A stretch of DNA of 64,000 nt from Pristiophorus japonicus (taxonomy: Eukaryota). Shown in pieces: positions 10,201 through 62,086 of this stretch (the first letter of the stretch is position 1; the number at the start of each line of letters is the position of its first letter). The stretch covers positions 145,762,001 through 145,826,000 of the forward strand of contig NC_091984.1 in assembly GCF_044704955.1 (NCBI RefSeq), written 5' to 3'. The notes below the pieces were generated by a model. That model had not been told where the DNA came from. It ran no database searches and saw only the letters and a list, made by a program, of their open reading frames with translations. The translations under genes and the position numbers were made by a program.

Positions 10201-11730
10201 AATAGCGGATGCATTGACAGTCATTTTCCAACATTCCATAGACTCTGGATCAGTTCCTATGGAGTGGAGGGTAGTTAATGTAACCCCACTTTTTAAAAAA
10301 GGAGGGAGAGAGAAAACAGTGAATTATAGACCGGTCAGCCTGACATCGGTAGTGGGTAAAATGATGGAATCAATTCTAAAGGATGTCATAGCAGCGCATT
10401 TGGAAAGAGGCGACATGATAGGTCCAAGTCAGCATGGATTTGTGAAAGGGAAATCATGCTTGACAAATCTGGAATTTTTTGAGGATGTTTCCAGTAGAGT
10501 GGACAAGGGAGAACCAGTTGATGGGGTGTATTTGGACTTTCAGAAGGCTTTCGACAAGGTCCCACACAAGAGATTAGTGTGCAAAGTTAAAGCACATGGG
10601 ATTGGGGGTAGTGTGCTGACATGGATTGAGAACTGGTTGTCAGACAGGAAGCAAAGAGTAGGAGTAAATGGGTACTTTTCAGAATGGCAGGCAGTGACTA
10701 GTGGGGAACCGCAAGATTTTGTGCTGGGGTCCCAGCTGTTTACATTGTACATTCATGATTTAGACGAGGGGATTAAATATAGTATCTCCAAATTTGCAGA
10801 TGACACTAAGTTGGGTGGCAGTGTGATCTGCAAGGAGGATGCTATGAGGCTGCAGTGTGACTTGGATAGGTTAGGTGAGTGGGCAAATGCATGGTAGATG
10901 AAGTATAATGTGGATAAATGTGGGGTTATCCACTTTGGTGGTAAAAACAGAGAGACAGACTATTATCTGAATGATGACAGATTAGGAAAAGGGGAGGTGC
11001 AACGAGACCTGGGTGTCATGGTACATCAGTCATTGAAGGTTGGCATGCAGGTACAGCAGGTGGTTAAGAAAGCAAATGGCATGTTGGCCTTCATAGCGAG
11101 GGGATTTGAGTACAGGGGCAGGCAGGTGTTACTACAGTTGTAAAGGGCCTTGGTGAGGCCACACCTGGAGTATTGTGTACAGTTTTGGTCTCCTAACTTG
11201 ATGAAGGACGTTGTTGCTATTGAGGGAGTGCAGCGAAGGTTCACCAGACTGATTCCCGGGATGGCGGGACTGACATATCAAGAAAGACTGGATCAACTGG
11301 GCTTGTATTCACTGGAGTTCAGAAGAATGAGAGGGGACCTCATAGAAACGTTTAAAATTCTGACGGGTTTAGACAGGTTAGATGCAGGAAGAATGTTCCC
11401 AATGTTGGGGAAGTCCAGAACCAGGGGTCACAGTCTAAGGATAAGTGGTAAGCCATTTAGGACCGAGATGAGGAGAAACTTCTTCACCCAGAGAGTGGTG
11501 AAACTGTGGAATTCTCTGCCACAGAAAGTTGTTGAGGCCATTTCACTAAATATATTCAAAAAGGAGTTAGATATAGTCCTTACGACTAGGGGAATCAAGG
11601 GCTATGGTGAGAAAGCAGGAAGTGGGTACTGAAGTTGCATGTTCAGCCATGAACTCATTGAATGGCGGTGCAGGCTCGAAGGGCCAAATGGCCTACTCCT
11701 GCACCTATTTTCTATATTTCTATGTTTCTA
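7205..11730 (+). mobile_element. Full-length CR1 LINE, disabled: 70-bp monomer 5' UTR, ORF1 (7716-~8650) and ORF2 (~8640-11632)
   Basis: ORF1 has CxxC...CxxC, a leucine zipper and the esterase motif IGDSIVR. ORF2 has an APE domain (VGITETWL, MGDFN, SDH) and RT (SPGPDGLHP, KFADD). The 3' hairpin tail ends in (tatgtttc)n. Stops are present in both ORFs. Confidence 0.95.
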
Positions 11731-28437: not shown

Positions 28438-29016
28438 ATTGAGGCAAAATCTGGTATTCTGGATGTCGCCGCTCCTTTTAACGCCCTCTGCAAAGCACGC
28501 ACAGCAAATGTAACGCCCTTATTTAAAAAAGGAGGCAGACAGAAAGCAGGAAACTATAGACCAGTTAGTCTAACATCTGTCGTTGGGAAAATGCTGGAGT
28601 CCATTATTAAGGAAGCAGTAGCAGGACATTTGGAAAAGCATTGTTCAATCAAGCAGAGTCAGCACGGTTTTATGAAAGGGAAATCATGTTTGACAAATTT
28701 TCTGAAATTCTTTGAGGATGGAACAAGCAGGGTGGATAAAAGGTAACCAGTGGATGTGGTGTATTTGGATTTCCAGAAGGCATTCGATAAGGTGCCACAT
28801 AAAAGGCACAAGATAAAAGTTCACGGGGTTGGGGGTAATGTATTAGCATTTATCGAGGATTGGCTAACTAACAGAAAACAGGGAGTCAGAATAAATGGGT
28901 CATTTTCCCGTTACCAAACGGTAACTTGTGGGGTGCCACGGGGATCAGTGCTGGGGCCTCAATTATTTACAATCTCTATTAATGACGAAGGGACCAAGTG
29001 GAAAGTAACCAAGTTT

Positions 29017-29366
29017 TTTTTATTTTTTTTTAATTCGTAGCCAATCGTTCCAATTCTTTGTCAAATCACAAACGCCAGAGGTCACCTTGCACATGCCAAG
29101 GATCACTCTGCGCCAATGCTCTTAGCCAAAAGGCCTAGAGCCACTGCACCGTTCCTGGAAGTACTGCAATACCAGGTTCGTGCCATGGAGGTGGATGGGT
29201 CAGGACCCCCACACACCTCCATGGAGGTGGATGGGTCAAACCTCCCCACCCACCTCCTGTTTCCAAAAATGCAAGCATATACCTTCCTGACCAGGGAGAA
29301 ACCACCCGGAGGTCATGGTGGCTGGTCAGAAACGGTACTACACTTGATCTTAGCCAAAAGGCCGAG
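29017..29366 (-). mobile_element. U2 snRNA-derived retroposon (candidate SINE or variant-U2 retrocopy) with poly(A) and an 11-bp TSD
   Basis: 31/31 match to U2 nt 8-38, Sm site ATTTTTGG, stem-loop IV cctggtattgcagtacttccaggaacggtgca, A-tail, and TSD taaccaagttt (29006-29016) / ttaccaagttt (29367-29377). Confidence 0.9.
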
Positions 29367-29377
29367 TTACCAAGTTT

Positions 29378-29880
29378 GCTGGGAGGACAGACGCACCAAC
29401 ATTATTGTCCTCGACCAGGCCAACATCCCCAGTATTGAAGCACTGACCACATTGATCAGCTTTGCTAGGCAGGCCACATTGTCCACATGCCAGACATGAG
29501 ACTCCCAAAGCAAGCGCTCTCCTCAGAACTCCTTCACAGCAAACAAGCCAAATGGGCAGAGGAATATTACAAGGACACCCTCAAAGCCTCCCTGATAAAG
29601 TTCAACATCCCCACTGACACCTGGGAGTCCCTGGCCAAAGACCTCCCGAAGTGGAGGAACTGTATCCTGGAGGGCGCTGAGCACTTCAAGTCTCATCGCC
29701 GAGAGCATGCAGAACCCAAGCACAGGCAGCGGAAGGAATGCGCGGCAAACCTGTCCCACCCTCCCTTACCCTCAACAACTATATGTCCCACCTGTGGCAG
29801 GGACTGTTCAGCCACCTAACGACTCATTCTACGAGTAGAGGCAAGTCTTCCTCGATTCCGAGGGACTGCCTATGATGATG
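29378..29880 (+). mobile_element. RTE-clade LINE 3' end
   Basis: WEDRRTN..DQANIPSIEALT, MPDMRLPKQAL, KDTLKASL and CPTCGRDC; tail gggactgcct(atg)n. Confidence 0.85.
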
Positions 29881-31132
29881 GGTGGGAAAGCAAATTGTGA
29901 GGACACAAAAAATCTGCAAAGGGATATAGACAGGCTAAATGAGTGGGTAAAACGTTGGAAGATGGAGTATAATGTGGGAAAATGTGATGTAATTCACTTT
30001 GGCAGGAAAGCAATTTATTTTTTAATTGGAGAAAAATTGCAAACTGTTGCAGTACAGAGGGACCTGAGGGTCCTTGTGCATGAAACACAAAAAGTTAGTA
30101 TGCGGGTACAACAAGTGATCAGGAAAGCAAATGGAATTTTGGCCTTTATTGTCAGGGGCGGGGGGTGGGGGGGGGAGTATAGAAGTAGGGAAGTCCTGCT
30201 ACAACTGTACAGGGTATTGGTGAGACCCCCCTGAGAACCCCCACACCCGATCGCCCAGGTTCCCCCCGTTCCCACAAGGTCAGTCCCCGATCACTCCCCT
30301 GGTCTACCCTGAACCCCCCCCCGCCCCCCCGCTCCCCAACCCTCCTCCCCCCAGCCCCCGAACGACCCCCGACTCCCCCAGGAGCTGGAGCATCTCCTCA
30401 GGCCGACACAACAGTGCTGGGTAGCAGTCACACACACACCTACAGGCGGTGCTGGGTAACAGTCTCACACACAACACACACACACCGACAGACGGTGCTG
30501 GGGAACAGACACACACACAACACACACACCTACAGACGGTGCTGGGTAAGCCACACTAACACTCAGGGACATGTACACGGTGATACACTGACTGCTCCTC
30601 TCCCTAAGCTGAGGCCTCACTCGGTACAGTTTTGTGCTGCCGCAACGGGCCACACGTAAAGGAGAGAGAATGCAACATTGTGACTGTGGCCTCCTGCCCC
30701 CAGATTGCCCCCAGCAGTCAGCACAGAGTGCACAGTGCGATCCCACACCCCCAGTGTGCAGAGTGAGAGCCAATGCTCAGACTGGGAGGGTTTAATCCCA
30801 GCAGCTTTTAGTGTCTCTGTGTTTAATCTTGTGCACTCCAGGGGTTCGAGGTCAAATTGATCGTTTTAAAATGATTGAAAAATTTGCTTTGAATCAAATC
30901 TCCTGCTGATGTGCCATTGATTGACAGCACACCCAGCCAATCAGTTCAGACACTTACTGAAATGCAGCCAATCCAGCTGAGGGGGAGGTGGGACATTTCC
31001 AAAGCACTCGCCAGACACAGACTGAATATTCTTCACGTTTATTGCCTTTTACAGATTCACATTTACAGAAACAAGACTTGAATAAACAGCCCAGCGCGAG
31101 CGAGCTGGAGACATTCACAGGGAGAATGCAGC

Positions 31133-35337: not shown

Positions 35338-37888
35338 TGGGAGGGCATCAAACAGGAAATTAGGGGTGCATGCAATAAAGGTGCAGCAATTATCACGGGT
35401 GACTTTAATATGCACATAGATTGGGCTGAACAAACTGGAAGCAAAACGGTGGAGGAGGATTTCCTGGAGTGCATAAGGGATGGTTTTCGAGACCAATATG
35501 TTAAGGAACCAACTAGGGGGGAGGCCATCTTAGACTGGGTGTTGTGTCATGAGAGAGGATTAATTAGCAATCTCGTTGTGCGAGGCCCCTTGGGGAAGAG
35601 TGACCATAATTTGGAGGAATTCTACATTAGGATGGAGAAAGAAACAGTTAATTCAGAGACCATGGTCCAGAACTTAAAGAAGGGTAACTTTGAAGGTATG
35701 AGGCGTGAATTGGCTAAGATAGATTGGCGAATGATACTTAATGGGTTGACAGTGGATGGGCAATGGCAGACATTTAGAGACTGCATGGATGAACTATAGC
35801 AATTATACATCCCTGTCTGGTGTAAAAATAAAAAAGGGAAGGTGGCTCAACCGTGGCTATCAAGGGAAATCAGGGATAGTATTAAAGCCAAAGAAGAGGC
35901 ATACAAATTGGCCAGAAATAGCAGCGAACCTAGAGACTGGGAGAAATTTAGAACTCAGCAGAGGAGTACATAGGGTTTGATTAGGGCAGGGAAAATGGAG
36001 TACGAGAGGAAGCATGCAGGGAACATTAAGACGGATTGCAAAAGCTTCCATTGATATGTAAAGAGAAAAAGGTTAGTCAAGACAAACGTAAGTTCCCTGC
36101 AGTCAGAATCAGGGGACGTCATAATGGGGAACAAAGAAATGGCAGACAAATTGAACAAGTACTTTGGTTCGTTAATCACTAAGGCGGACACAAACAACCT
36201 TCCGGATATAAAAGGGGTCAGAGGGTCTAGTAAGAAGGAGGAACTGAGGGAAATCCTTATTAGTCGGGAAATTGTGTTGGGGAAATTGATGGGATTGAAG
36301 GCCGATAAATCACCAGGGCCTGTTGGTCTGCATCCCAGGGTACTTAAGGAGGTGGCCTTGGAAATAGCAGATGCATTGACAGTCATTTTCCAACATTCCA
36401 TAGAGTCTGAATCAGTTCCTATGGAGTGGAGGGTAGCCAATGCAAACCCACTTTTTAAAAAAGAAGGGAATTAGAAAACAGGGAATTATAGATCGGTCAG
36501 CCTGGTATCGGTAGTGGGTAAAATGATGGAATCAATTCTTAAGGATGTCATAGCAGCACATTTAGAAAGAGGTGACATGATAGGTCCAAGTCAACATGGA
36601 TTTGTGAAAGGGAAATCATGCTTGACAAAACTTCTGGAATTTTTTTTAGGATGTTTCCAGTAGAGTGGACAAGGAAGAACCAGTTGATGTGGTGTATTTG
36701 GACTTTCAGAAGGCTTTCGACAAGGTCCCAAACAAGAGATTAATGTGCAAAGTTAAAGCACATGGGATTGGGGGTAGTGTGCTGACGTGGATTGAGAACT
36801 GGTTGGCAGACAGGAAGTAAAGGTTAGGAGTAAATGGGTACTTTTCAGAATGGCAGGCAGTGACTAGTGGGGTACCGCAAGGTTCTGTGCTGGGGCCCCA
36901 GCTGGTTACATTGTACATTAATGATTTAGACGAGGGGATTAAATGTAGTATCTCCAAATTTGCAGATGACACTAAGTTGGGTGGCAGTGTGAGCTGCGAG
37001 GAGGATGCTATGAGGCTGCAGAGTGACTTGGATAGGTTTGGTGAATGGGCAAATGCATGGCAGATGAAGTATAATGTGGATAAATGTGAGGTTATCCACT
37101 TTGGTGGTAAAAACAGAGAGACAGCCTATTATCTGAATGGTGACAGATTAGGAAAAGGGGAGGTGCAACGAGACCTGGGTGTCATGGTATGTCAGTCATT
37201 GAAGATTGGCATGCAGGTACAGCAGGCGGTTAAGAAAGCAAATGACATGTTGGCCTTCATAGAGAGGGGATTTGAGTACAGGGCAGGGAGGTGTACTACA
37301 GTTGTGCAGGGCCTTGGTGAGGCCACACCTGGAGTATTGTGTACAGTTTTGGTCTCCTGACCTGAGGAAGGACATTGTTGCTATTGAGGGAGTGCAGCGA
37401 AGGTTCACCAGACTGATTCCCGGGATGGCGGGACTGACATATCAAGAAAAACTGGATCAACTGGGCTTGTATTCACTGGAGTTCAGAAGAATGAGAGGGA
37501 ATCTCATTGACACGTTTAAAATTCTGACGGGTTTAGACAGGTTAGATGCAGGAAGAATGTTCCCAATGTTGGGGAAGTCCAGAACCAGGGGTCACAGTCT
37601 AAGGATAAGGGGTAAGCCATTTAGGACCGAGATGAGGAGAAACTTCTTCACCCAGAGAGTGGCGAAGCTGTGGAATTCTCTATCACAGAAAGTTGTTGAG
37701 GCCAATTCACTAAATATATTCAAAAAGGAGTTAGATGTAGTCCTTACTACTAGGGGGAATCAAGGGGTATGGCGAGAAAGCAGGAATGGGGTACTGAAGT
37801 TGCATGTTCAGCCATGAACTCATTGAATGGCGGTGCAGGCTCGAAGGGCCGAATGGCCTACTCCTGCACCTATTTTCTATGTTTCTAT
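35338..37888 (+). mobile_element. 5'-truncated CR1 of the same young subfamily as 7205 and 48624, in the J-C intron
   Basis: Near-identical ORF2 peptides and 3' tail. Confidence 0.95.
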
Positions 37889-38082: not shown

Positions 38083-39386
38083 ATGCAGCATGTATTCATG
38101 AAGGGGAAATCATGTTTGACTAACTTACTGGAATTCTTTGAGGATATAACGAGCATGGTGGATAGAGGTGTACCGATGGATGTGGTGTATTTAGATTTCC
38201 AAAAGGCATTCGATAAGGTGCCACACAAAAGGTTACTGCTGAAGATAAAGGTACGCGGAGTCAGTGGAAATGTATTGGCATGGATCGAGAATTGGCTGGC
38301 TAACAGAAAGCAGAGAGTCGGGATAAATAGGTCCTTTTCCGGTTAGAAATCGGTGGTTAGTGGTGTGCCACAGGGATCGGTGCTGGGACTGTTTACAATA
38401 TTCATAGATGACCTCGAAGAGGGGACAGAGTGTAGTGCAACAACATTTTCAGATGACACTAAGATTAGTGGGAAAGCGGGTTGTGTAGAAGACTCAGAGA
38501 AGCTGCAAGGAGATTTGGATAGGTTAAGCGAATGGGCTAAGGTTTGGCAGATGGAATACAATGTCGGAAAGTGTGAGGTCATCCACCTTGGGAAAAAAAA
38601 CAGTAAAAGGGAATATTATTTGAATGGGGAGAAATTACAACATGCTGCGGTGCAGAGGGACCTGGGGGTCCTTGTGCATGAATCCCAAAAGGTTAGTTTG
38701 CAGGTGCAGCAGGTCATCAGGAAGGCAAATAGAATGTTGGCCTTCATTGCGAGAGGGATGGAGTACAAAAGCAGGGAGGTCTTGCTGCAACTGTATAAGG
38801 TATTGGTAAGGCTGCACCTGGAGTACTGCGTGCAGTTTTGGTCACCTTACTTAAGGAAGGATATACTAGCTTTGGAAGGGGTACAGAGACGATTCACTAG
38901 GCTGATTCCAGAAATGAGGGGATTACCTTATGATGATAGATTGAGTAGACTGGGTCTTTACTCCTTGGAGTTCAGAAGGATAAGGGGGGATCTTATAGAA
39001 ACAGTTAAAATCATGAAAGGGATAGACAAGATAGAGGCAGAGAGGTTGTTTCCATTGGTAGGGGAGACTAGAACTAGGGGGCACAGCCTCAAAATACGGA
39101 GGAGCCAATTTAAAACTGAGTTGAGAAAGAATTTCTTCTCCCAGAGGGTTGTGAATCTGTGGAATTCTCTGCCCAAGGAAGCAGTTGAGGCTAGCTCATT
39201 GAATGTTTTCAAGTCAAAGATAGATAGATTTTTAACCAATAAGGGAATTAAGGGTTACGGGGAGAGGGCGGGTAAGTGGAGCTGAGTCCACGACCAGATC
39301 AGCCATGATCTTATTGAATGGCGGAGCAGGCTCGAGGGGCTAGATGGCCTACTCCTGTTCCTAATTTTTATGTTCTTATGTTCTTA
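38083..39386 (+). mobile_element. 5'-truncated CR1 (HER1-like tail), in the J-C intron
   Basis: 310-aa RT C-terminal ORF at 38353; tail atcagccatgatcttattgaatggcggagcaggctcg...(tatgttct)n. Confidence 0.95.
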
Positions 39387-44019: not shown

Positions 44020-45647
44020 GCGAGGAACTTAACACAGTCACAATCACTAAGGAGGTGGTACTCAGTAAGATCATGGGACTAAAGGCGAATAAATCTCCTG
44101 GATCTGATGGCTTGCATCCCAGGGTCTTATGAGAACACACGGCAGTCTCAGTGGATTCATTGGTTGTAATTTACCAAAATTCCCTGTATTCTTGGGAGGT
44201 CCCAGCAGATTGTAAAACTGCAAATGTAACGCCCCTATTTACAAAAGGAGGCAGACAAAAAGCAGGAATCTATAGACCAATTAACCTAACATCTGTGGTT
44301 GGGAAAATGTTGGAGTCCATTATTAAAGAAGCAGTAGCAGGACATTTGGATAAGCATAATTCAGTCAGGCAGAGTAAGCATGGAATTATGAAGGGGAAGT
44401 CATGTTTGATAAATTTGCAGAATTCTTTGAGGATGCAATGAGCAGGGTGGATAAAGGGGAACCAGTGGATGTGGTGTATTTGGACCTCCAGAAGGCATTT
44501 GACAAAATGCCACGTAAGAGGTTACTGCACAAGATAAAAATTCACAGGGTTGGGGGTAATATGTTAGCATGGATAGACGATTGGCTAACTAACAGAAAAC
44601 AGAGAGTCTGCAAAAATGGTTCATTTTCGGGTTGGAAATCAGTAACTAGTGGGGTGCCGCAGGGATCAGTGCGGGGACCCCAACTATTTACAATATATAT
44701 TAACGACTTGGATGATAGAACCGAATATAATGTAGCCACGTTTTCTGACGATACAAAGATGGGAGGAAAAGCAATGTGTGAGGAGGACACAAAAAACATG
44801 CAAAAGGACGTAGGCAGGCGAAGTGAGTGGGCAAAAATTTGGCAGATGGTGTATAATGTTGGAAAGTATGAGATCATGCACTTTGGCAGAAAAAAAAATC
44901 AAAGAGCAAGTTATTATTTAAATGGAGAAAGATTGCAAAGTGCTGTGGTGCAGCGGGTACTTGTGCATGAAACACAAAATGTTAGTATGCAGATACAGTA
45001 AGTGATCAGGAAGGCCAATGGAATATTGGCCTTTATTGCAAAGGGGACGGAGTATAAAAGCAGGGAAGTCTTGCTACAGCTATACAGGGTATTGGTGTGG
45101 ACACACTAATTTTGGATTCCATATTTAAGAAAGGATATACTTGCTTTGGAGGCAGGTCAGAGAAGGTTCATTAGGTTGATTCAGGCGATGAGGCGGTTGA
45201 TTTATGAGGAAAGGTTGAGTAGGTTGGGCATCTGCTCATTCGAATTCGGAAGAATGAGAGGTGATCTTATCGAAATGTATCAGATTTTGAGGGGGCTTGA
45301 CAAAGTGGCTGCAGAGAGGATGTTTCCACTGAGGGGGAGAATTGAACTAGAGGGCATGATCTTAGAATAAGGGGACTCCCATTTAAAACAGATTAGAGGA
45401 ATTTCTTCTCTCTGAGGGTTGTAAATCTGTGGAATTGGCTGCCTCAGAGAGCTGTGGAAGCTGGGTCGTTGAATAAATTTAAGACAGAGATAGACAGTTT
45501 CTTAACCGACATGGGAATAAGGGGTTATGGGGAGCGGGGAGGGATGTGGAGCTGAATCCATGATCGTATCAGCCATGATCGTATTAAATAGCGGAGCAGG
45601 CTCGAGGGGCCATGAGGCCTACTCCTGCTCCTATTTCTTATGTTCTT
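44020..45647 (+). mobile_element. CR1 ORF2 3' half
   Basis: RT ORFs 44151, 44402 and 45146, plus the tail. Confidence 0.9.
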
Positions 45648-51600: not shown

Positions 51601-52917
51601 GATGGAATCAATTCTTAAGGATGTCATAGCAGCGCATTTGGAAAGAGATGACATGATAGGTCCAAGTCAGCATGGATTTGTGAAAGGGAAATCATGCTTG
51701 ACATATCTTCTGGAATTTTTTGAGGATGTTTCCAGTAGAGTGGACAAGGAAAAACCAGTTGATGTGGTATATTTGGAATTTCAGAAGGCTTTCGACAAGG
51801 TCCCACACAAGAGATTAATGTGCAAAGTTAAAGCACATGGGATTGGGGGTAGTGTGCTGGCATGGAGTGAGAACTGGTTGTCAGACAGGAAGCAAGAGTA
51901 GGTGTAAGTGGGTACTTTTCAGAATGGCAGTCAGTGACTAGTGGGGTGCCGCAAGGTTCTGTGCTGGGGCCCCAGCTGTTTACACTGTACATTAATGATT
52001 TAGACGAGGGGATTAAATGTAGTATCTCCAAATTTGCAGATGACACTAAGTTGGGTGGCAGTATGAGCTGCGAGGAGGATGCTGTGAGGCTGCAGAGCGT
52101 CTTGGATAGGTTAGGTGAGTGGGCAAATGCATGGCAGATGAAGTATAATGTGGATAAATGTGAGGTTATCCACTTTGGTGGTAAAAACAGAGAGACAGAC
52201 TATTATCTGAATGGTGACAGATTAGGAAAAGGGGAGGTGCAACGAGACCTGGGTGTCATGGTATGTCAGTCATTGAAGGTTGGCATGCAGGTGCAGCAGG
52301 CGGTTAAGAAAGCAAATGGCATATTGGCCTTCATAGCGAGGGGATTTGAGTACAGGGGCAGGGAGTATTGTGTACAGTTTTGGTCTCCTAACCTGAGGAA
52401 GGACATTCTTGCTATTGAGGGAGTGCAGCGAAGGTTCACCAGACTGATTCCCGGGATGGCGGGACTGACCTATCAAGAAAGACTGGATCAACCGGGCTTG
52501 TATTCACTGGAGTTCAGAAGAATGAGAGGGGACCTCATAGAAACGTTTAAAATTCTGATGGGTTTAGACAGGTTAGATGCAGGAAGAATGTTCCCAATGT
52601 TGGGGAAATCCAGAACCAGGGGTCACAGTCTAAGGATAAGGGATAAGCCATTTAGGACCGAGATGAGGAGAAACTTCTTCACCCAGAGAGTGGTGAACCT
52701 GTGGAATTCTCTACCACAGAAAGTAGTTGAGGCCAATTCACTAAATATATTCAAAAGGGAGTTAGATGAAGTCCTTACTACTAGGGGGATCAAGGGGTAT
52801 GGCGAGAAAGCAGGAATGGGATACTGAAGTTGCATGTTCAGCCATGAACACATTGAATGGCGGTGCAGTCTAGAAGGGCCGAATGGCCTACTCCTGCACT
52901 TATTTTCTATGTTTTCT
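48624..52917 (+). mobile_element. Full-length CR1 LINE, disabled, with a ~71-bp monomer 5' UTR
   Basis: ORF1 at 48963 (zinc finger and GDS esterase); ORF2 pieces at 50266, 50666 and 51934; 3' tail. Confidence 0.95.
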
Positions 52918-57064: not shown

Positions 57065-58645
57065 AGAATCATAAGAACATAAGAAATAGGAGCAGGACTC
57101 GGCCATTTGGCCCCTCGAGCCTGCTCCGCCATTCAATAAGATCATGGCTGATCTGATCCTGGGCTCAGCGCCACTTCCCTACCCTTTCCGCATAACCCTT
57201 TACTGCCTTATCGTTCAAAAATCTGTCTATCTCCACCTTAAATATATTCAATGACCAGCCTCCATAGCTCTCTGGGGCGGAGAACTGAACAGATTTACAA
57301 CCCTCTGAGAGAAGAAATTCCACCTCATCTCAATTCTCAATGGGCGACCCCTTATTCTTAAACTCTGCCCCTAGTTCTAGATTCCCCAATGACTGGAAAC
57401 ATCCTCACTGCATCTATCTTGTCGAGTCCCCTCAGAATCTTATATGTTTCAATAAGTTCATCTCTCATTCTTCTAAACTTCAAAGAGTAAATGTGGAGTG
57501 GCCGTGGAAGTGGAGCTGACTCCATGATCAGATCAGCCATGACCTTATTGAATGGCGGAGGGGCCGTATGTCCTACTCCTGTTCCTATTTCTTATGTTCT
57601 GATTAACCTGCTCAACCTTTCTTCATAAGTCAGCCGCTTCATCTCAGGAATCAACCTCGTGAACCTTATCTGAATTGCCTCCAGTGCAAATATATCCCTC
57701 CTTACATAAGGAGACCAAAACTGTACACAGTACTCTCGGTCTCACCAATACTCTGTACAGATGTAGCAGGACTTCCCTGTTTTTATATTCCATCCCCCTT
57801 GCAATTAAGGCCAACGTTCTATTTGCTTCCTGATTACTTGCTGTATCTGCATACTAACTTTTTGTGTTTCATGCGCAAGGACCCCCAGGTCCCTCTGTGT
57901 TGCAGCATTTTGTAATCTCTCTCCATTTAAATAATAATTTGCTCTTTGATTTTTTACACTCGGTCCCTTCATATAAGTTATTACCATAGATTGTAAATAG
58001 TTGAGGCCCCAACACCGATCCCTGTGAAACCCAACTAGTTACCGTTTGCCAACCAGAAAATGACCCATTGATCCTGACTCTCTGTTTTCTGTGAGCTAGC
58101 CAATCCTCTATCCATGCTAATATATTAGCACCAACCCCATGTTCTCTTATCGTGTGCGGTAATCTTTTATGTGGCATCTTATTGAATCCCTTCTAGAAAT
58201 CCAAATACACCACATCCACTTGTCCCCCCATATCCACCCTGCGCGCTACGTCCTCAAAGAACTCCAACAAATGTGTCAAACATGATTTCCCTTTCATAAA
58301 AACATGCTGACTCTGCTTGATTGAATTATGCTTTTCCAAATGTCCTGCTACTGCTTCCTTAATAATGAACTCCAGCATTTTCCCAACGACAGATGTTAGG
58401 CTAACTGGTCTATAGTTTCCTGCTTTCTGTCTCTCTTTTTTAAATAGCGGCGTTATATTTGCGGTTTTCCAATCTGCTGGGACCTCTCCAGAATTCTGGG
58501 AACTTTGGTAGATTGCAACCAATGCATCCACTATCTCTGCAGCCACTTCATTTCAGACCCTAGGATGCAGGCCATCAGGTCCAGGGGACTTGTCCACCTT
58601 TAGTTCCATTATTTTACCGAGTACTTTTTCTGTAGTGATAGTGAT
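57065..58645 (-). mobile_element. CR1 ORF2 3' half, rearranged (short inverted tail at 57490-57600)
   Basis: RT ORFs 58193 and 57869, plus the tail. Confidence 0.9.
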
Positions 58646-59480: not shown

Positions 59481-62086
59481 TGTCCTCTACCGTAAAGACT
59501 GATACAAAATATTTGTTCAGAGTTTCTGCCATCTTCATGTTCCTCATCACTAATTCCCTGGTTTTATCCTCTCAGGGACCAACATTTATTTTAGCCACTC
59601 TTTTCCTTTTTATATACCGATAGAAACTCTTGCTATCTCTTTTTATATTTTGTGCTAGTTTACTTTCATAATCTATCTTCCCATTCTTAATCATTTTTTT
59701 CATCATTCTTTGCTGGCTTTTAAAAGTTTCTCAATTTCTGTCCTTCCACTAGTTTTGGCCACTTTGTATGCCCTTGTTTTTAATTGGATACCATCCTTTA
59801 TTTCTTTAGTGAGCCACGGATGGCTATCTTTTCTTTTACACCATTTCCTCCTCACTGGAATATATTTTTCTTGAGAGTTGTGAAATATCTCCTTATATGT
59901 ATGCCATTGTTCATCAGCCATCCTACACTTTAATCTATTTTCCCAGTCCACTTTCGCCAAATCTGACCTCATACCTTTGTAGTCTCCATTATTTCAGCTT
60001 AGTACGCCGGTTAGAGATCCATCTTTCTCACCCTCAATCTGAATTTGAAATTGAACCATGTTATCCTCACTCAGTCCAAGGGGATCCTTTACTCAGAGAT
60101 TGTTTATTAATACTGTCTCATTATACAGGACCAGATCTAAGATAGCCTGTCCCCTGGTTTGTTCCATTACAAACTTCTCAAGGAACCCGTCCCTTATGCA
60201 CTCTATGAACTCTTCCTCAAGACTACCCTGATCAATTTGATTTATCCAATCAATGTGGAGGTTAAAATCACCCATAATTATTGCTGTTCCCTTTTTACAA
60301 TCCTCCACTATTTCTTGCTTTATACTCCGATCAACTGAGTTGCTAATGTTAGGGGGCCTATAGATATGCCCACCAGTGACTTTTTCCCTTTATTATTCCT
60401 TATCTCCACCCAAACTGTTTCAACATCCTGATCATTTGAGCCAATATCATTTCTCACTATTGCAGTGATTCCATCCTTTATCAACAGAACAACCCCACCT
60501 CCTTTTCCTTTCTGTCTGTCCTTCCGGATTGTCAAGGACGCCTGAGTATTTAGTTCCCAGTCCTGGTCACCTTGTAACCATGTCTCTGTAATGGCTATCA
60601 GATCATATTCATTTGTATCTATTTGTGCCTTCAACTCATCTATTTTGTTATTTAGACAAAGAGCCTTTAAATTTGTTTTTTTACCCTTTTTATCTGCTTG
60701 TTTCCTCTCTCCTTCAAACTCACTTTCTTTATTTTTGCTTTCTAATTCCAGCTTTAGTCCCCTCCCTACTGAATCTATTCTCAGGTTCCCATCCCCCTGC
60801 CAAGCTAGTTTAATCCCTCCCCAACATCACTAACAAATGCTCCCCTCGAGGATATTGGTCCTGGCACTGTTGAGGAGCAACCCGGCCGGTTTGTACAGGT
60901 CCCACCTCCCCCAGAAACGGTCTCAATGCCTCAGGAAACTAAAGCGTCCCACCTGCACCATCTCTCCCGCCACGCATTCATCTGCTCTATCCTCCTGTTT
61001 CTGTATTCACCAGCTCGTGGCACCGGGAGTAATCTGGAGATTAGAGAATAATTAGAGATTAAAGATTCTGAGAGAAGAAATTCTTCCTCATCTCGCTCTC
61101 ACCTCAGCCCCCTAGTTCTAGTCTCCCCTATCAGTGGAAACATCCTCTCTGCATCCACCTTGTAAAGCCCCCTCATAATCTTACATGTTTCGATAAGATC
61201 ACCTCTCTTTCTTCTGAATTCCAATGAGTAGATGCCCAACCTACTCAACCTTTCCTGAAAAGAAAATCCCCCTCATCTCTGGAATCAATCTAGTGAACCT
61301 TCTCTGAACTGCCTCCAAAGCAAGTATATCCTTTCTTAAATATGGAAACCAAAATTGCATGCAGTATTCCAGGTGTGGCCTCACCAATACCCCATAAAAC
61401 TGCAGCAAGACTTCATTACTTTTATATTCCATTCCCATTGCAATAATGGCTAAGATTCCTGACCACTTGCTGTACCTGCATACTATCCTTTTGTGTTTCA
61501 TGCACAAGTACCCCCAGGTCCCGCTGTACTACAGCACTTTGTAATTTTTCTCCATTCGAATAATAACCTGCTCATTGATTTTTTTCTGCCAATGTGCATA
61601 ACCTCACAGTTTCAAGCATGATACTCCATCTGCCAAACTTTAGCCCACTCACTTAGCCTGTCTATGTCTTTTTGCAGGTTTTTTGTGTCTTCCTCACACA
61701 TTGCTTTTACTCCCATCTTTGTATCATCAGCAAACATGGCTACATTACACTCGGTCCCTTCATCCAAATCATTAATATAGATTGCAAATAGTTGGGGTCC
61801 TAACACTGATCCCTGCGGCACCCTAGTAGTTACGGATTGCCAGCCCAGAGAATGAACCATTTATCGTGACTCTCTGTTTTCTGTTAGTTTGCCAATCCTC
61901 TATCCATTCTAATATATTACCCCAAACCCCATGAGCTTTTATCTTGTGCAGTAACCTTTTATGTGTCACCTTGTCAATTGTCTGCTGGAAGTCCAAATAC
62001 ACCACATAAACTGATTCCTCTTTATCCACCCTGTTCGTTACATCCTCAAAGAACTCCAGAAAATTTGTCAAACATGACTTCCCCTT
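59218..62086 (-). mobile_element. Stack of CR1 fragments (tail, APE/ORF1 part, RT part)
   Basis: IAITETWLQGD, MGDFNLHIDW, MFADDTKM and RPHLEYC. Confidence 0.9.

What the first reader, a model, noticed from the sequence alone, without database searches (positions are those of the whole stretch)
29006..29377. U2 snRNA-derived retroposon that preserves U2 snRNP architecture through compensatory changes
Seen on the minus strand, 5' to 3': (1) an exact copy of U2 nt 8-38, including stem I and the branch-point recognition sequence GUAGUA; (2) stem IIa rewritten from TATCAG/CTGATA to TGACCAG/CTGGTCA, with a new inner hairpin CCACC/GGTGG in its loop and stem IIb absent; (3) an intact Sm site ATTTTTGG (29270-29263); (4) stem-loop III replaced by a different, well-paired hairpin (GGAGGTGGGTGGG/CCCATCCACCTCC) present twice in tandem; (5) stem-loop IV with the U2B''-binding loop ATTGCAGTAC; (6) a second partial stem I (ctaggccttttggctaag); (7) an ~85-nt non-U2 tail, poly(A) and a 10/11 TSD. 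Established: ordinary U2 pseudogenes are truncated copies that decay at random, and I know of U-snRNA-derived SINEs (SINEU) only from crocodilians. Inference: covariation plus retained protein-binding sites means the source RNA was selected to fold and probably to assemble on Sm proteins. It is either an undescribed shark SINE family that exploits the snRNP pathway or a retrocopy of a functional variant U2.
Basis: partly seen in the sequence, partly recalled or inferred. Interest (0 to 1): 0.85.

Follow-up and report, generated by a model that had tools for sequence, protein, structure and literature searches.

The report
Shark snRNA-mosaic retroposon copy (SINEU-like)
A 349-base poly(A)-tailed mobile-element copy stitched from pieces of the spliceosomal U2 and U1 RNAs has landed in another jumping gene. 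It resembles the SINEU elements published only for crocodilians, and nothing here shows that it works as, or was selected to fold like, a U2 snRNP.

Summary
Rfam's U2 model matches 29139-29373 (-) at 67.5 bits. The insert has a poly(A) tail and an 11/12 target-site duplication, so it is a retroposed copy and not a gene.

The "compensatory rewriting of stem IIa" does not hold. The inner hairpin is a remnant of U1 stem-loop I (2 of 5000 shuffles reach its score). The enclosing hairpin is no more stable than shuffled sequence (z -1.5).

The element is a mosaic: U2 nt 8-38 (exact), diverged U2 39-51, U1 stem-loop I, U2 about 85-188 with stem-loop III tandemly duplicated, a second U2 5' module, an 88-nt unique tail, then poly(A). 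This matches the design of crocodilian SINEU-1 (Kojima 2015). It lies antisense in a CR1 reverse-transcriptase gene.

One new lead: the exact U2 block stops at nt 38, the published insertion site of the U2-targeting LINEs Keno and Utopia.

This scan has already noted at least 22 similar U2/U1 mosaics elsewhere in the same genome.

Verdict: new member of a known kind, moderate interest.

The parts
29366..29377 (-). 5' target-site duplication AAACTTGGTAAC. The last C could instead be U2 nt 8.
   Evidence: 11/12 match to 29016-29005; 8 of 50000 shuffles reach it
29336..29366 (-). U2 snRNA nt 8-38 (stem I plus the branch-point recognition GUAGUA), exact
   Evidence: 31/31 against the Rfam RF00004 consensus. 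The block ends at nt 38, the Keno/Utopia insertion site in U2 genes.
29322..29335 (-). diverged U2 nt 39-51/52 (CCGTTTCTGACCAG)
   Evidence: alignment: about 8 of 13 identical, in sharp contrast with the preceding block
29294..29319 (-). remnant of U1 snRNA stem-loop I (ACCATGA...GGTGGTTTCTCCC).
   Evidence: local score 26 against the U1 stem-loop I oligo printed in PMC5041995. Reached by 2 of 5000 shuffles and by one other locus among 3518 window tiles. No Rfam U1 hit.
29263..29283 (-). U2 single-stranded region resuming at about nt 85, with Sm site ATTTTTGG at 29270-29263
29223..29257 (-). U2 stem-loop III, copy 1: a 13-bp perfect stem
   Evidence: aligned to stem-loop III of RF00004; -27.9 kcal/mol, z -5.0
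29187..29220 (-). U2 stem-loop III, copy 2 (tandem duplicate; identical 3' arm, one uncompensated mismatch in the stem)
   Evidence: z -3.0
29145..29180 (-). U2 stem-loop IV with loop AUUGCAGUAC, and the U2 3' end
29120..29144 (-). second U2 5' module. Model nt 7-26 lie at 29139-29120. By eye it may reach back to about nt 2-4, which would be a head-to-tail junction of a U2 3' end with a U2 5' end.
   Evidence: 14.5 bits, 19/20 identical; the extension is read by eye
29032..29119 (-). 88-nt non-snRNA tail of unknown origin
   Evidence: No Rfam match at E<=10. Fold no better than shuffles (z -0.4). No similar DNA in the window.
29017..29031 (-). poly(A) tail, A9 T A5
29005..29016 (-). 3' target-site duplication AAACTTGGTTAC
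28600..29016 (+). host: CR1-like LINE reverse-transcriptase gene, interrupted right before the FADD box (...GSVLGPQLFTISINDEGTKWKVTKF|)
   Evidence: Seven other copies of this RT stretch lie in the window. Six of them run straight through the site (F[AS]DDTK) and the seventh has a deletion there.
29383..29883 (+). separate 5'-truncated L2-like LINE 3' fragment ending in (ATG)3, inserted 4 bp from the retroposon's TSD. The CR1 RT resumes at about 29884 (MGGKANCEDTK...).

Best explanation
This is one dead, retroposed copy of a composite, non-autonomous retroposon built from spliceosomal snRNA modules.

Module order, 5' to 3' on the minus strand:
- U2 nt 8-38, exact
- a diverged U2 nt 39-51
- a remnant of U1 stem-loop I, which replaces U2 nt about 52-84
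- U2 nt about 85-188, with stem-loop III tandemly duplicated
- a second U2 5' module
- an 88-nt unique tail
- poly(A)

Shown: an RNA of this structure was reverse-transcribed and integrated, with a 12-bp target duplication, at a nick that leaves ...AGTTT-3' to prime on the poly(A). The site lies in the RT gene of a CR1 LINE.

Inferred:
- The enzyme was an L1/Tx1-type LINE acting in trans.
- The mosaic grew by repeated template jumps of the reverse transcriptase. Each jump went from the 5' end of the element's RNA onto the 3' end of a U2 or U1 RNA, as Kojima proposed for crocodilian SINEU-1. A partial duplication was added on top.
- The intact stem I, Sm site and stem-loop IV are there because those modules were copied from real U2 not long ago. 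Selection for snRNP assembly has not been shown.
- With U2 nt 1-7 missing, no promoter, and T4-T5 runs that would stop RNA polymerase III, this copy is inert.
For: - The U2 covariance model scores 67.5 bits (gathering score 46), covering the full model 1-192 with a 45-nt insertion in stem-loop III and a rebuilt IIa/IIb region.
- A second U2 5' module lies at 29139-29120.
- The U1 stem-loop I match is reached by 2 of 5000 shuffles.
- Stem-loop III is tandemly duplicated with identical 3' arms.
- There is a poly(A) tail and an 11/12 TSD; 8 of 50000 shuffles reach that.
- The flanks are an interrupted CR1 RT gene, so there is no snRNA promoter context.
- The published SINEU design is the same: U1/U2 pieces added recurrently at the 5' end of a shared non-LINE-like tail, partial duplications inside the snRNA parts, poly(A), TSDs of about 10 bp, oligo-T runs that exclude pol III, and Tx1 as the mobiliser.
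- As leads only, not evidence: this scan holds at least 22 notes of U2/U1 mosaic poly(A) retroposons in the same genome. One is described as III-III-IV-I plus a non-U2 tail, and one as a U2 3' end fused to a U2 5' end.
Against: - Only one copy could be examined. There is none elsewhere in the 64-kb window.
- Copy number, shared termini and a consensus could not be obtained.
- The partner LINE and the origin of the tail are unknown.
- The U1 assignment rests on 26 nt, and Rfam's U1 model does not report it.
- This species' own U2 sequence is unknown to me, so some 'divergence', for example in stem-loop III, could be native.
Confidence: 0.75

Rival explanations
1. A one-off chimeric retropseudogene. 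During a single L1-type retrotransposition the reverse transcriptase jumped between several cellular RNAs (an unknown polyadenylated RNA, U2, U1, U2). On this reading the element belongs to no family.
For: snRNA-mRNA/LINE/Alu chimeras with poly(A) and TSDs made by template switching are well documented in humans (summarised). Only one copy is visible to me.
Against: It needs at least four junctions plus an internal tandem duplication in one event. The sharply uneven divergence of the U2 parts (31/31, then about 8/13) suggests modules of different ages. Other notes of this scan describe the same module order elsewhere in the genome (unchecked).
Confidence: 0.12
2. One reading: the source RNA is under selection to keep U2 snRNP architecture. 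On this reading it is either a SINE that rides the Sm/snRNP biogenesis pathway or a functional variant U2, and the changed stems are compensatory.
For: Stem I, the Sm site and stem-loop IV are intact. Both stem-loop III copies are well paired, and the head folds better than shuffles (z -5.1). Relative to human-type stem-loop III the changes lengthen the stem (by eye, from memory of the human sequence).
Against: The 'rewritten IIa' is a U1 module and its hairpin is not significant. The two stem-loop III copies differ by an uncompensated stem mismatch. The conserved nt 39-46 are changed and stem IIb is lost. The intact parts are simply those that are near-identical to the parent U2. No alignment of copies exists to test covariation, and no RNA data could be laid.
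Confidence: 0.1
3. A live U2 or variant snRNA gene sits at this locus.
For: The Rfam U2 score is above the gathering threshold.
Against: It is flanked by a TSD and poly(A) inside a CR1 RT gene. U2 nt 1-7 are missing. There are no upstream snRNA promoter elements, because the upstream DNA is LINE coding sequence.
Confidence: 0.01

Closest known systems
SINEU-1 subfamilies of crocodilians (Kojima 2015, PMC4494074)
   Same: A short poly(A)-tailed non-autonomous retroposon. A short U2 5' piece is joined to a tail that matches no known LINE. Further U1/U2 pieces are stacked on the 5' side. There are partial duplications inside the snRNA-derived parts, TSDs of about 10 bp, and oligo-T runs that argue against pol III.
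   Different: This element keeps an almost full-length U2 including the Sm site and stem-loops III and IV. The insertion is into a CR1 RT gene rather than Mariner-N4.
SINEU-3 (an internally deleted U2, analogous to monomeric Alu)
   Same: The U2 5' end and the U2 3' half are retained, the middle of U2 is lost, and a short non-U2 3' end and poly(A) follow.
   Different: Here the missing middle is replaced by a U1 stem-loop I remnant, stem-loop III is duplicated, and a second U2 5' module precedes the tail.
L1-mediated snRNA chimeric retropseudogenes (Buzdin 2002; Garcia-Perez 2007, as cited)
   Same: An snRNA sequence at the 5' side of another RNA's 3' end, with poly(A), TSDs and template switching as the joining mechanism.
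   Different: Those are independent single-junction events. This element has at least four junctions, and scan notes suggest a recurring architecture.
Keno (Tx1 clade) and Utopia, U2-gene-targeting LINEs (PMC4640811)
   Same: Their insertions leave U2 nt 39 onward as the 3' flank. In this element the exact U2 block ends at nt 38.
   Different: No LINE coding sequence is present here. This copy is not inserted in a U2-like target. The link is a single coincidence of position.

Membership tests
SINEU (snRNA-headed SINE-like retroposons, Kojima 2015) | 5' region derived from U1 and/or U2 snRNA | tested here: met
   RF00004 at 67.5 bits; second U2 module; U1 stem-loop I remnant
SINEU (snRNA-headed SINE-like retroposons, Kojima 2015) | short (<500 bp), non-coding, with a 3' poly(A) tail | tested here: met
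   349 bp from 29366 to 29018 by my first count, ending in A9TA5. Open frames across it are short and found nothing in protein searches.
SINEU (snRNA-headed SINE-like retroposons, Kojima 2015) | inserted by LINE machinery: target-site duplication of about 10 bp | tested here: met
   12-bp TSD, 11/12; 8 of 50000 shuffles
SINEU (snRNA-headed SINE-like retroposons, Kojima 2015) | a multi-copy family whose copies share junctions and tail, not a sum of independent chimeras | tested here: inconclusive
Only unchecked scan notes suggest many copies.
SINEU (snRNA-headed SINE-like retroposons, Kojima 2015) | sequence homology of the non-snRNA tail to crocodilian SINEU consensus sequences | not tested
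   No SINEU consensus (Repbase) was available in the tools.
SINEU (snRNA-headed SINE-like retroposons, Kojima 2015) | shares target preference with, and is mobilised by, a Tx1-clade LINE | not testable with these tools
   No Tx1 element in the window. Scan notes report CR1-targeting Tx1 families in this genome, but their target letters were not shown. Only 1 of 8 CR1 copies in the window is hit at this site.
Functional U2 snRNA gene (Rfam RF00004) | covariance-model score above the gathering threshold | tested here: met
   67.5 against 46 bits
Functional U2 snRNA gene (Rfam RF00004) | conserved nt 39-46 and stems IIa/IIb | tested here: not met
   3 of the 8 positions nt 39-46 are changed. Stem IIb is absent and the region is replaced by a U1-like segment.
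Functional U2 snRNA gene (Rfam RF00004) | complete 5' end and gene context (external promoter, 3' box, no poly(A)) | tested here: not met
   It starts at nt 8, is flanked by a TSD inside a CR1 RT gene, and carries extra 3' modules and poly(A).
L1-type chimeric snRNA retropseudogene | a single template-switch junction between an snRNA and one other RNA | tested here: not met
   At least four junctions plus an internal duplication

The most novel reading that the evidence does not exclude
The active masters of this family sit at the Keno/Utopia site (between nt 38 and 39) of genuine U2 genes. They are transcribed from the U2 gene's own external promoter. Every transcript therefore starts with authentic U2 nt 1-38 and continues into the element's older, diverged U2/U1 body. 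The retained Sm site and stem-loop IV would then send this RNA through the cytoplasmic snRNP assembly route, where a Tx1/L1-type LINE protein captures it. This would answer the open question of how SINEU-type elements are transcribed.
Probability: 0.12. Interest if true: 0.75.

Novelty: new member of a known kind. Interest (0 to 1): 0.42.

Why it matters
snRNA-headed SINEs are published for crocodilians only (Kojima 2015). How they are transcribed without an internal promoter is still open.

A second, independent occurrence in a cartilaginous fish would show that this design arises repeatedly. These copies look younger and keep an almost whole U2, so they would give better material for finding master copies and the partner LINE.

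The abrupt switch from perfect to diverged U2 at nt 38/39 makes a concrete hypothesis searchable: masters inside U2 genes at the Keno site.

For annotation, such copies score above Rfam's U2 threshold and will be miscalled as U2 genes or pseudogenes.

Tried and rejected
The later folds were local scripts.
- **The look-up of sequencing runs.** 24 runs from 8 coded organisms hold parts of the 1-kb stretch, and none is on record as RNA. The small shares cannot be assigned to the element rather than its LINE flanks.
- **Fetching other copies through called ORFs.** No candidates came back, not even the window's own ORF, so this collection does not hold such ORFs.
- **Metagenome scan with a 20-mer across the junction between the second U2 module and the tail.** One hit, L001, which is unrelated RT-like coding DNA.
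- **The search of earlier findings by sequence with the tail.** Blank.
- **Rfam on sub-regions.** No U1 hit and no family for the tail. A sub-threshold Prion_pknot hit on the plus strand comes from the duplicated CCATGGAGGTGGATGG motif and is rejected as chance.
- **U1-derived 26-mers quoted by Kojima.** Only weak matches, with 51-69 of 2000 shuffles reaching them.
- **Pfam on the larger ORFs of the window.** Only CR1-type RT domains and no Tx1 partner.
- **CpG observed/expected as an age marker.** 0.39-0.41 against 0.43 for the window, which is uninformative.
- **Similarity between the CR1 target site and the U2 nt 26-50 target of Keno.** None by eye.

Full report
**Observation**

Rfam's U2 model (RF00004) matches 29373-29139. 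The score is 67.5 bits against a gathering score of 46, with E 3.7e-11, and it is the only family at gathering level in the 64-kb window.

The alignment shows these points:
- U2 nt 8-38 are identical to the consensus (29366-29336).
- The stem IIa/IIb region is rebuilt.
- The Sm site AUUUUUGG lies at 29270-29263.
- Stem-loop III carries a 45-nt insertion.
- Stem-loop IV is almost canonical, with the loop AUUGCAGUAC.

A second U2 5' module (model nt 7-26, 19/20 identical) lies at 29139-29120. After it come an 88-nt stretch with no Rfam match (29119-29032) and a poly(A) tail A9TA5 (29031-29017).

The insert is bounded by AAACTTGGTAAC (29377-29366) and AAACTTGGTTAC (29016-29005). That is an 11/12 match, and only 8 of 50000 shuffles of the 20-nt flanks reach it.

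**What the 'compensatory' features are**

Its inner part, ACCATGACCTCCGGGTGGTTTCTCCC (29319-29294), aligns to the U1 stem-loop I oligo printed in PMC5041995. Both stem arms are kept: ACCATGA, then GGTGGTTT followed by TCCC, where the element has one extra C between the two blocks. The loop differs.
- The local score of 26 is reached by 2 of 5000 shuffles.
- It is reached by one other locus among 3518 tiles of the window.
- Rfam's U1 model does not report this stretch, so the assignment is moderate, not strong.
- It agrees with the U2/U1 mosaics that other readers of this scan describe in the same genome.

The outer 8-bp pairing CTGACCAG/CTGGTCAG joins diverged U2 nt 44-51 to sequence just 3' of the U1 piece. 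The whole hairpin folds no better than dinucleotide shuffles (z -1.5), and Rfam pairs the region differently. It is a junction product, not demonstrated covariation.

*The stem-loop III hairpins.* The 'different hairpin present twice' is U2 stem-loop III. Rfam aligns its outer arms to stem-loop III. It is tandemly duplicated, as 29257-29223 and 29220-29187, with identical 3' arms.
- Copy 1 is a perfect 13-bp stem (z -5.0).
- Copy 2 has one uncompensated mismatch (z -3.0).

Whether its differences from the human-type stem are compensatory or simply native to this species' U2 cannot be told. I have neither that U2 nor other copies.

**Anatomy as a mosaic**

The module order is:
1. U2 nt 8-38, 31/31 identical
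2. U2 nt 39-51, about 8/13 identical
3. U1 stem-loop I remnant, replacing U2 nt about 52-84
4. U2 nt about 85-188, with stem-loop III doubled
5. U2 nt (about 2-)7-26
6. tail
7. poly(A)

The junction of the U2 3' end (...GGTGCA) directly with a U2 5' end is what a jump of reverse transcriptase would leave, from the 5' end of one RNA onto the 3' end of a U2 RNA.

The sense strand carries T4, T5 and T4 runs: the two stem I loops and the Sm site. These would stop RNA polymerase III. The tail is not unusually structured (z -0.4) and has no relative in the window.

**Context**

The plus strand to the left of the insert is a CR1-like reverse-transcriptase gene ending ...GSVLGPQLFTISINDEGTKWKVTKF. That is immediately before the FADD box.

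Seven other copies of this CR1 stretch lie in the window. Six run straight through the site (KFADDTK, MFADDTK, TFSDDTK) and one has a deletion there.

Four bases to the right of the right-hand TSD begins a separate 5'-truncated L2-like LINE 3' fragment (29383-29883). It reads ...WEDRRTN...AGHIVHMPDMRLPKQ... and ends in ATGATGATG. After it the CR1 RT resumes with MGGKANCEDTKNLQRDIDRL.

So the element sits antisense in a CR1 that had taken, or later took, a second insertion almost at the same place. There is no snRNA promoter context, and U2 nt 1-7 are missing. This copy is an inert insertion.

The nick inferred from the junction leaves ...AGTTT-3', which can prime on poly(A). This fits L1/Tx1-type target-primed reverse transcription. 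That step is an inference.

**Comparison with the known**

Kojima (2015, PMC4494074) described SINEU in crocodilians:
- They are short poly(A) retroposons with U1/U2-derived heads.
- SINEU-1J is a short U2 5' piece on a tail that matches no LINE.
- Younger subfamilies arose by repeated 5' addition of U1 or U2 pieces and by partial duplications within them.
- SINEU-3 is an internally deleted U2.
- TSDs are about 10 bp.
- Oligo-T runs exclude pol III.
- Tx1-Mar LINEs are the likely mobilisers.
- None was found outside crocodilians.

The present element has the same design in every respect I could test. No paper in the searchable library reports such elements in cartilaginous fishes. Repbase and Dfam themselves could not be consulted.

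**A new lead**

Kojima and Jurka (PMC4640811) report that the U2-targeting LINEs Utopia and Keno (Tx1 clade) share one insertion site. The U2 sequence 3' of their insertions starts at nt 39.

In this element the perfect U2 block stops at nt 38, and the next 13 positions are only about 60% U2-like. One reading is that the subfamily's master copy lies in a real U2 gene at that site and is transcribed from the U2 promoter. Authentic nt 1-38 would then be fused to an older, diverged body. This is a single post-hoc coincidence of position, roughly 1-3% by chance. I give the model about 0.12.

**What could not be done**

- Copy number, shared termini, empty sites and expression were to come from read laying. 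Folding of the whole element was done in a local script.
- Two attempts to reach other copies through ORFs called on public contigs found no candidates.
- A metagenome scan gave one unrelated hit.
- The claim that this is a family therefore rests on the architecture and on unchecked notes of this scan. There are at least 22 notes of U2/U1 mosaic retroposons in 356 windows of this genome. Three earlier follow-ups reached the same SINEU-like reading and also could not count copies.

**Verdict**

This is a real feature. It is a retroposed copy of an snRNA-mosaic, SINEU-like element, and a new member of a known kind.

That inference was compensatory evolution preserving snRNP architecture, and hence selection for Sm assembly. 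The best example is a U1 module, and the intact protein-binding sites are the parts still identical to ordinary U2. It remains a testable minority hypothesis.

Noticed in passing
window 29383-29883 (+): A 5'-truncated L2-like LINE 3' fragment (ORF2 C-terminus ...WEDRRTN...AGHIVHMPDMRLPKQ..., ending in ATGATGATG). It is inserted in the same CR1 FADD codons, 4 bp from the retroposon's TSD, with about 11 nt of CR1 missing and no TSD. The GATGAT of the FADD codons may have offered microhomology to the (ATG)n end. A second copy of this LINE part lies at 48183-47914.
   Followed up: partly
window 10468-10758, 36632-36924, 38128-38387, 44421-44707, 51708-51998, 57953-58261, 61732-62061: Seven further copies of the same CR1 RT stretch, in two subfamilies at about 80% and about 69% identity to the local copy. 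Six are intact at the site hit here and one has a deletion there.
   Followed up: partly
window 29183-29234 (+): The antisense strand of the duplicated stem-loop III gives a sub-threshold Rfam Prion_pknot hit (35.2 bits against 39) and translates to HGGGW twice. This is a chance look-alike of the prion octarepeat, caused by the repeated CCATGGAGGTGGATGG motif.
   Followed up: yes
window 29139-29120 and 29366-29347 (-): Both U2 5' modules of the element begin near U2 nt 7-8 when aligned strictly. If that holds in other copies, it would hint at a preferred stop of reverse transcription near the heavily modified 5' end of mature U2.
   Followed up: no
L001 991-1010: The only metagenome contig (OFLC01001154.1) with the 20-mer spanning the second U2 module and the tail is unrelated coding DNA that looks like a reverse transcriptase. 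It is a chance match.
   Followed up: yes
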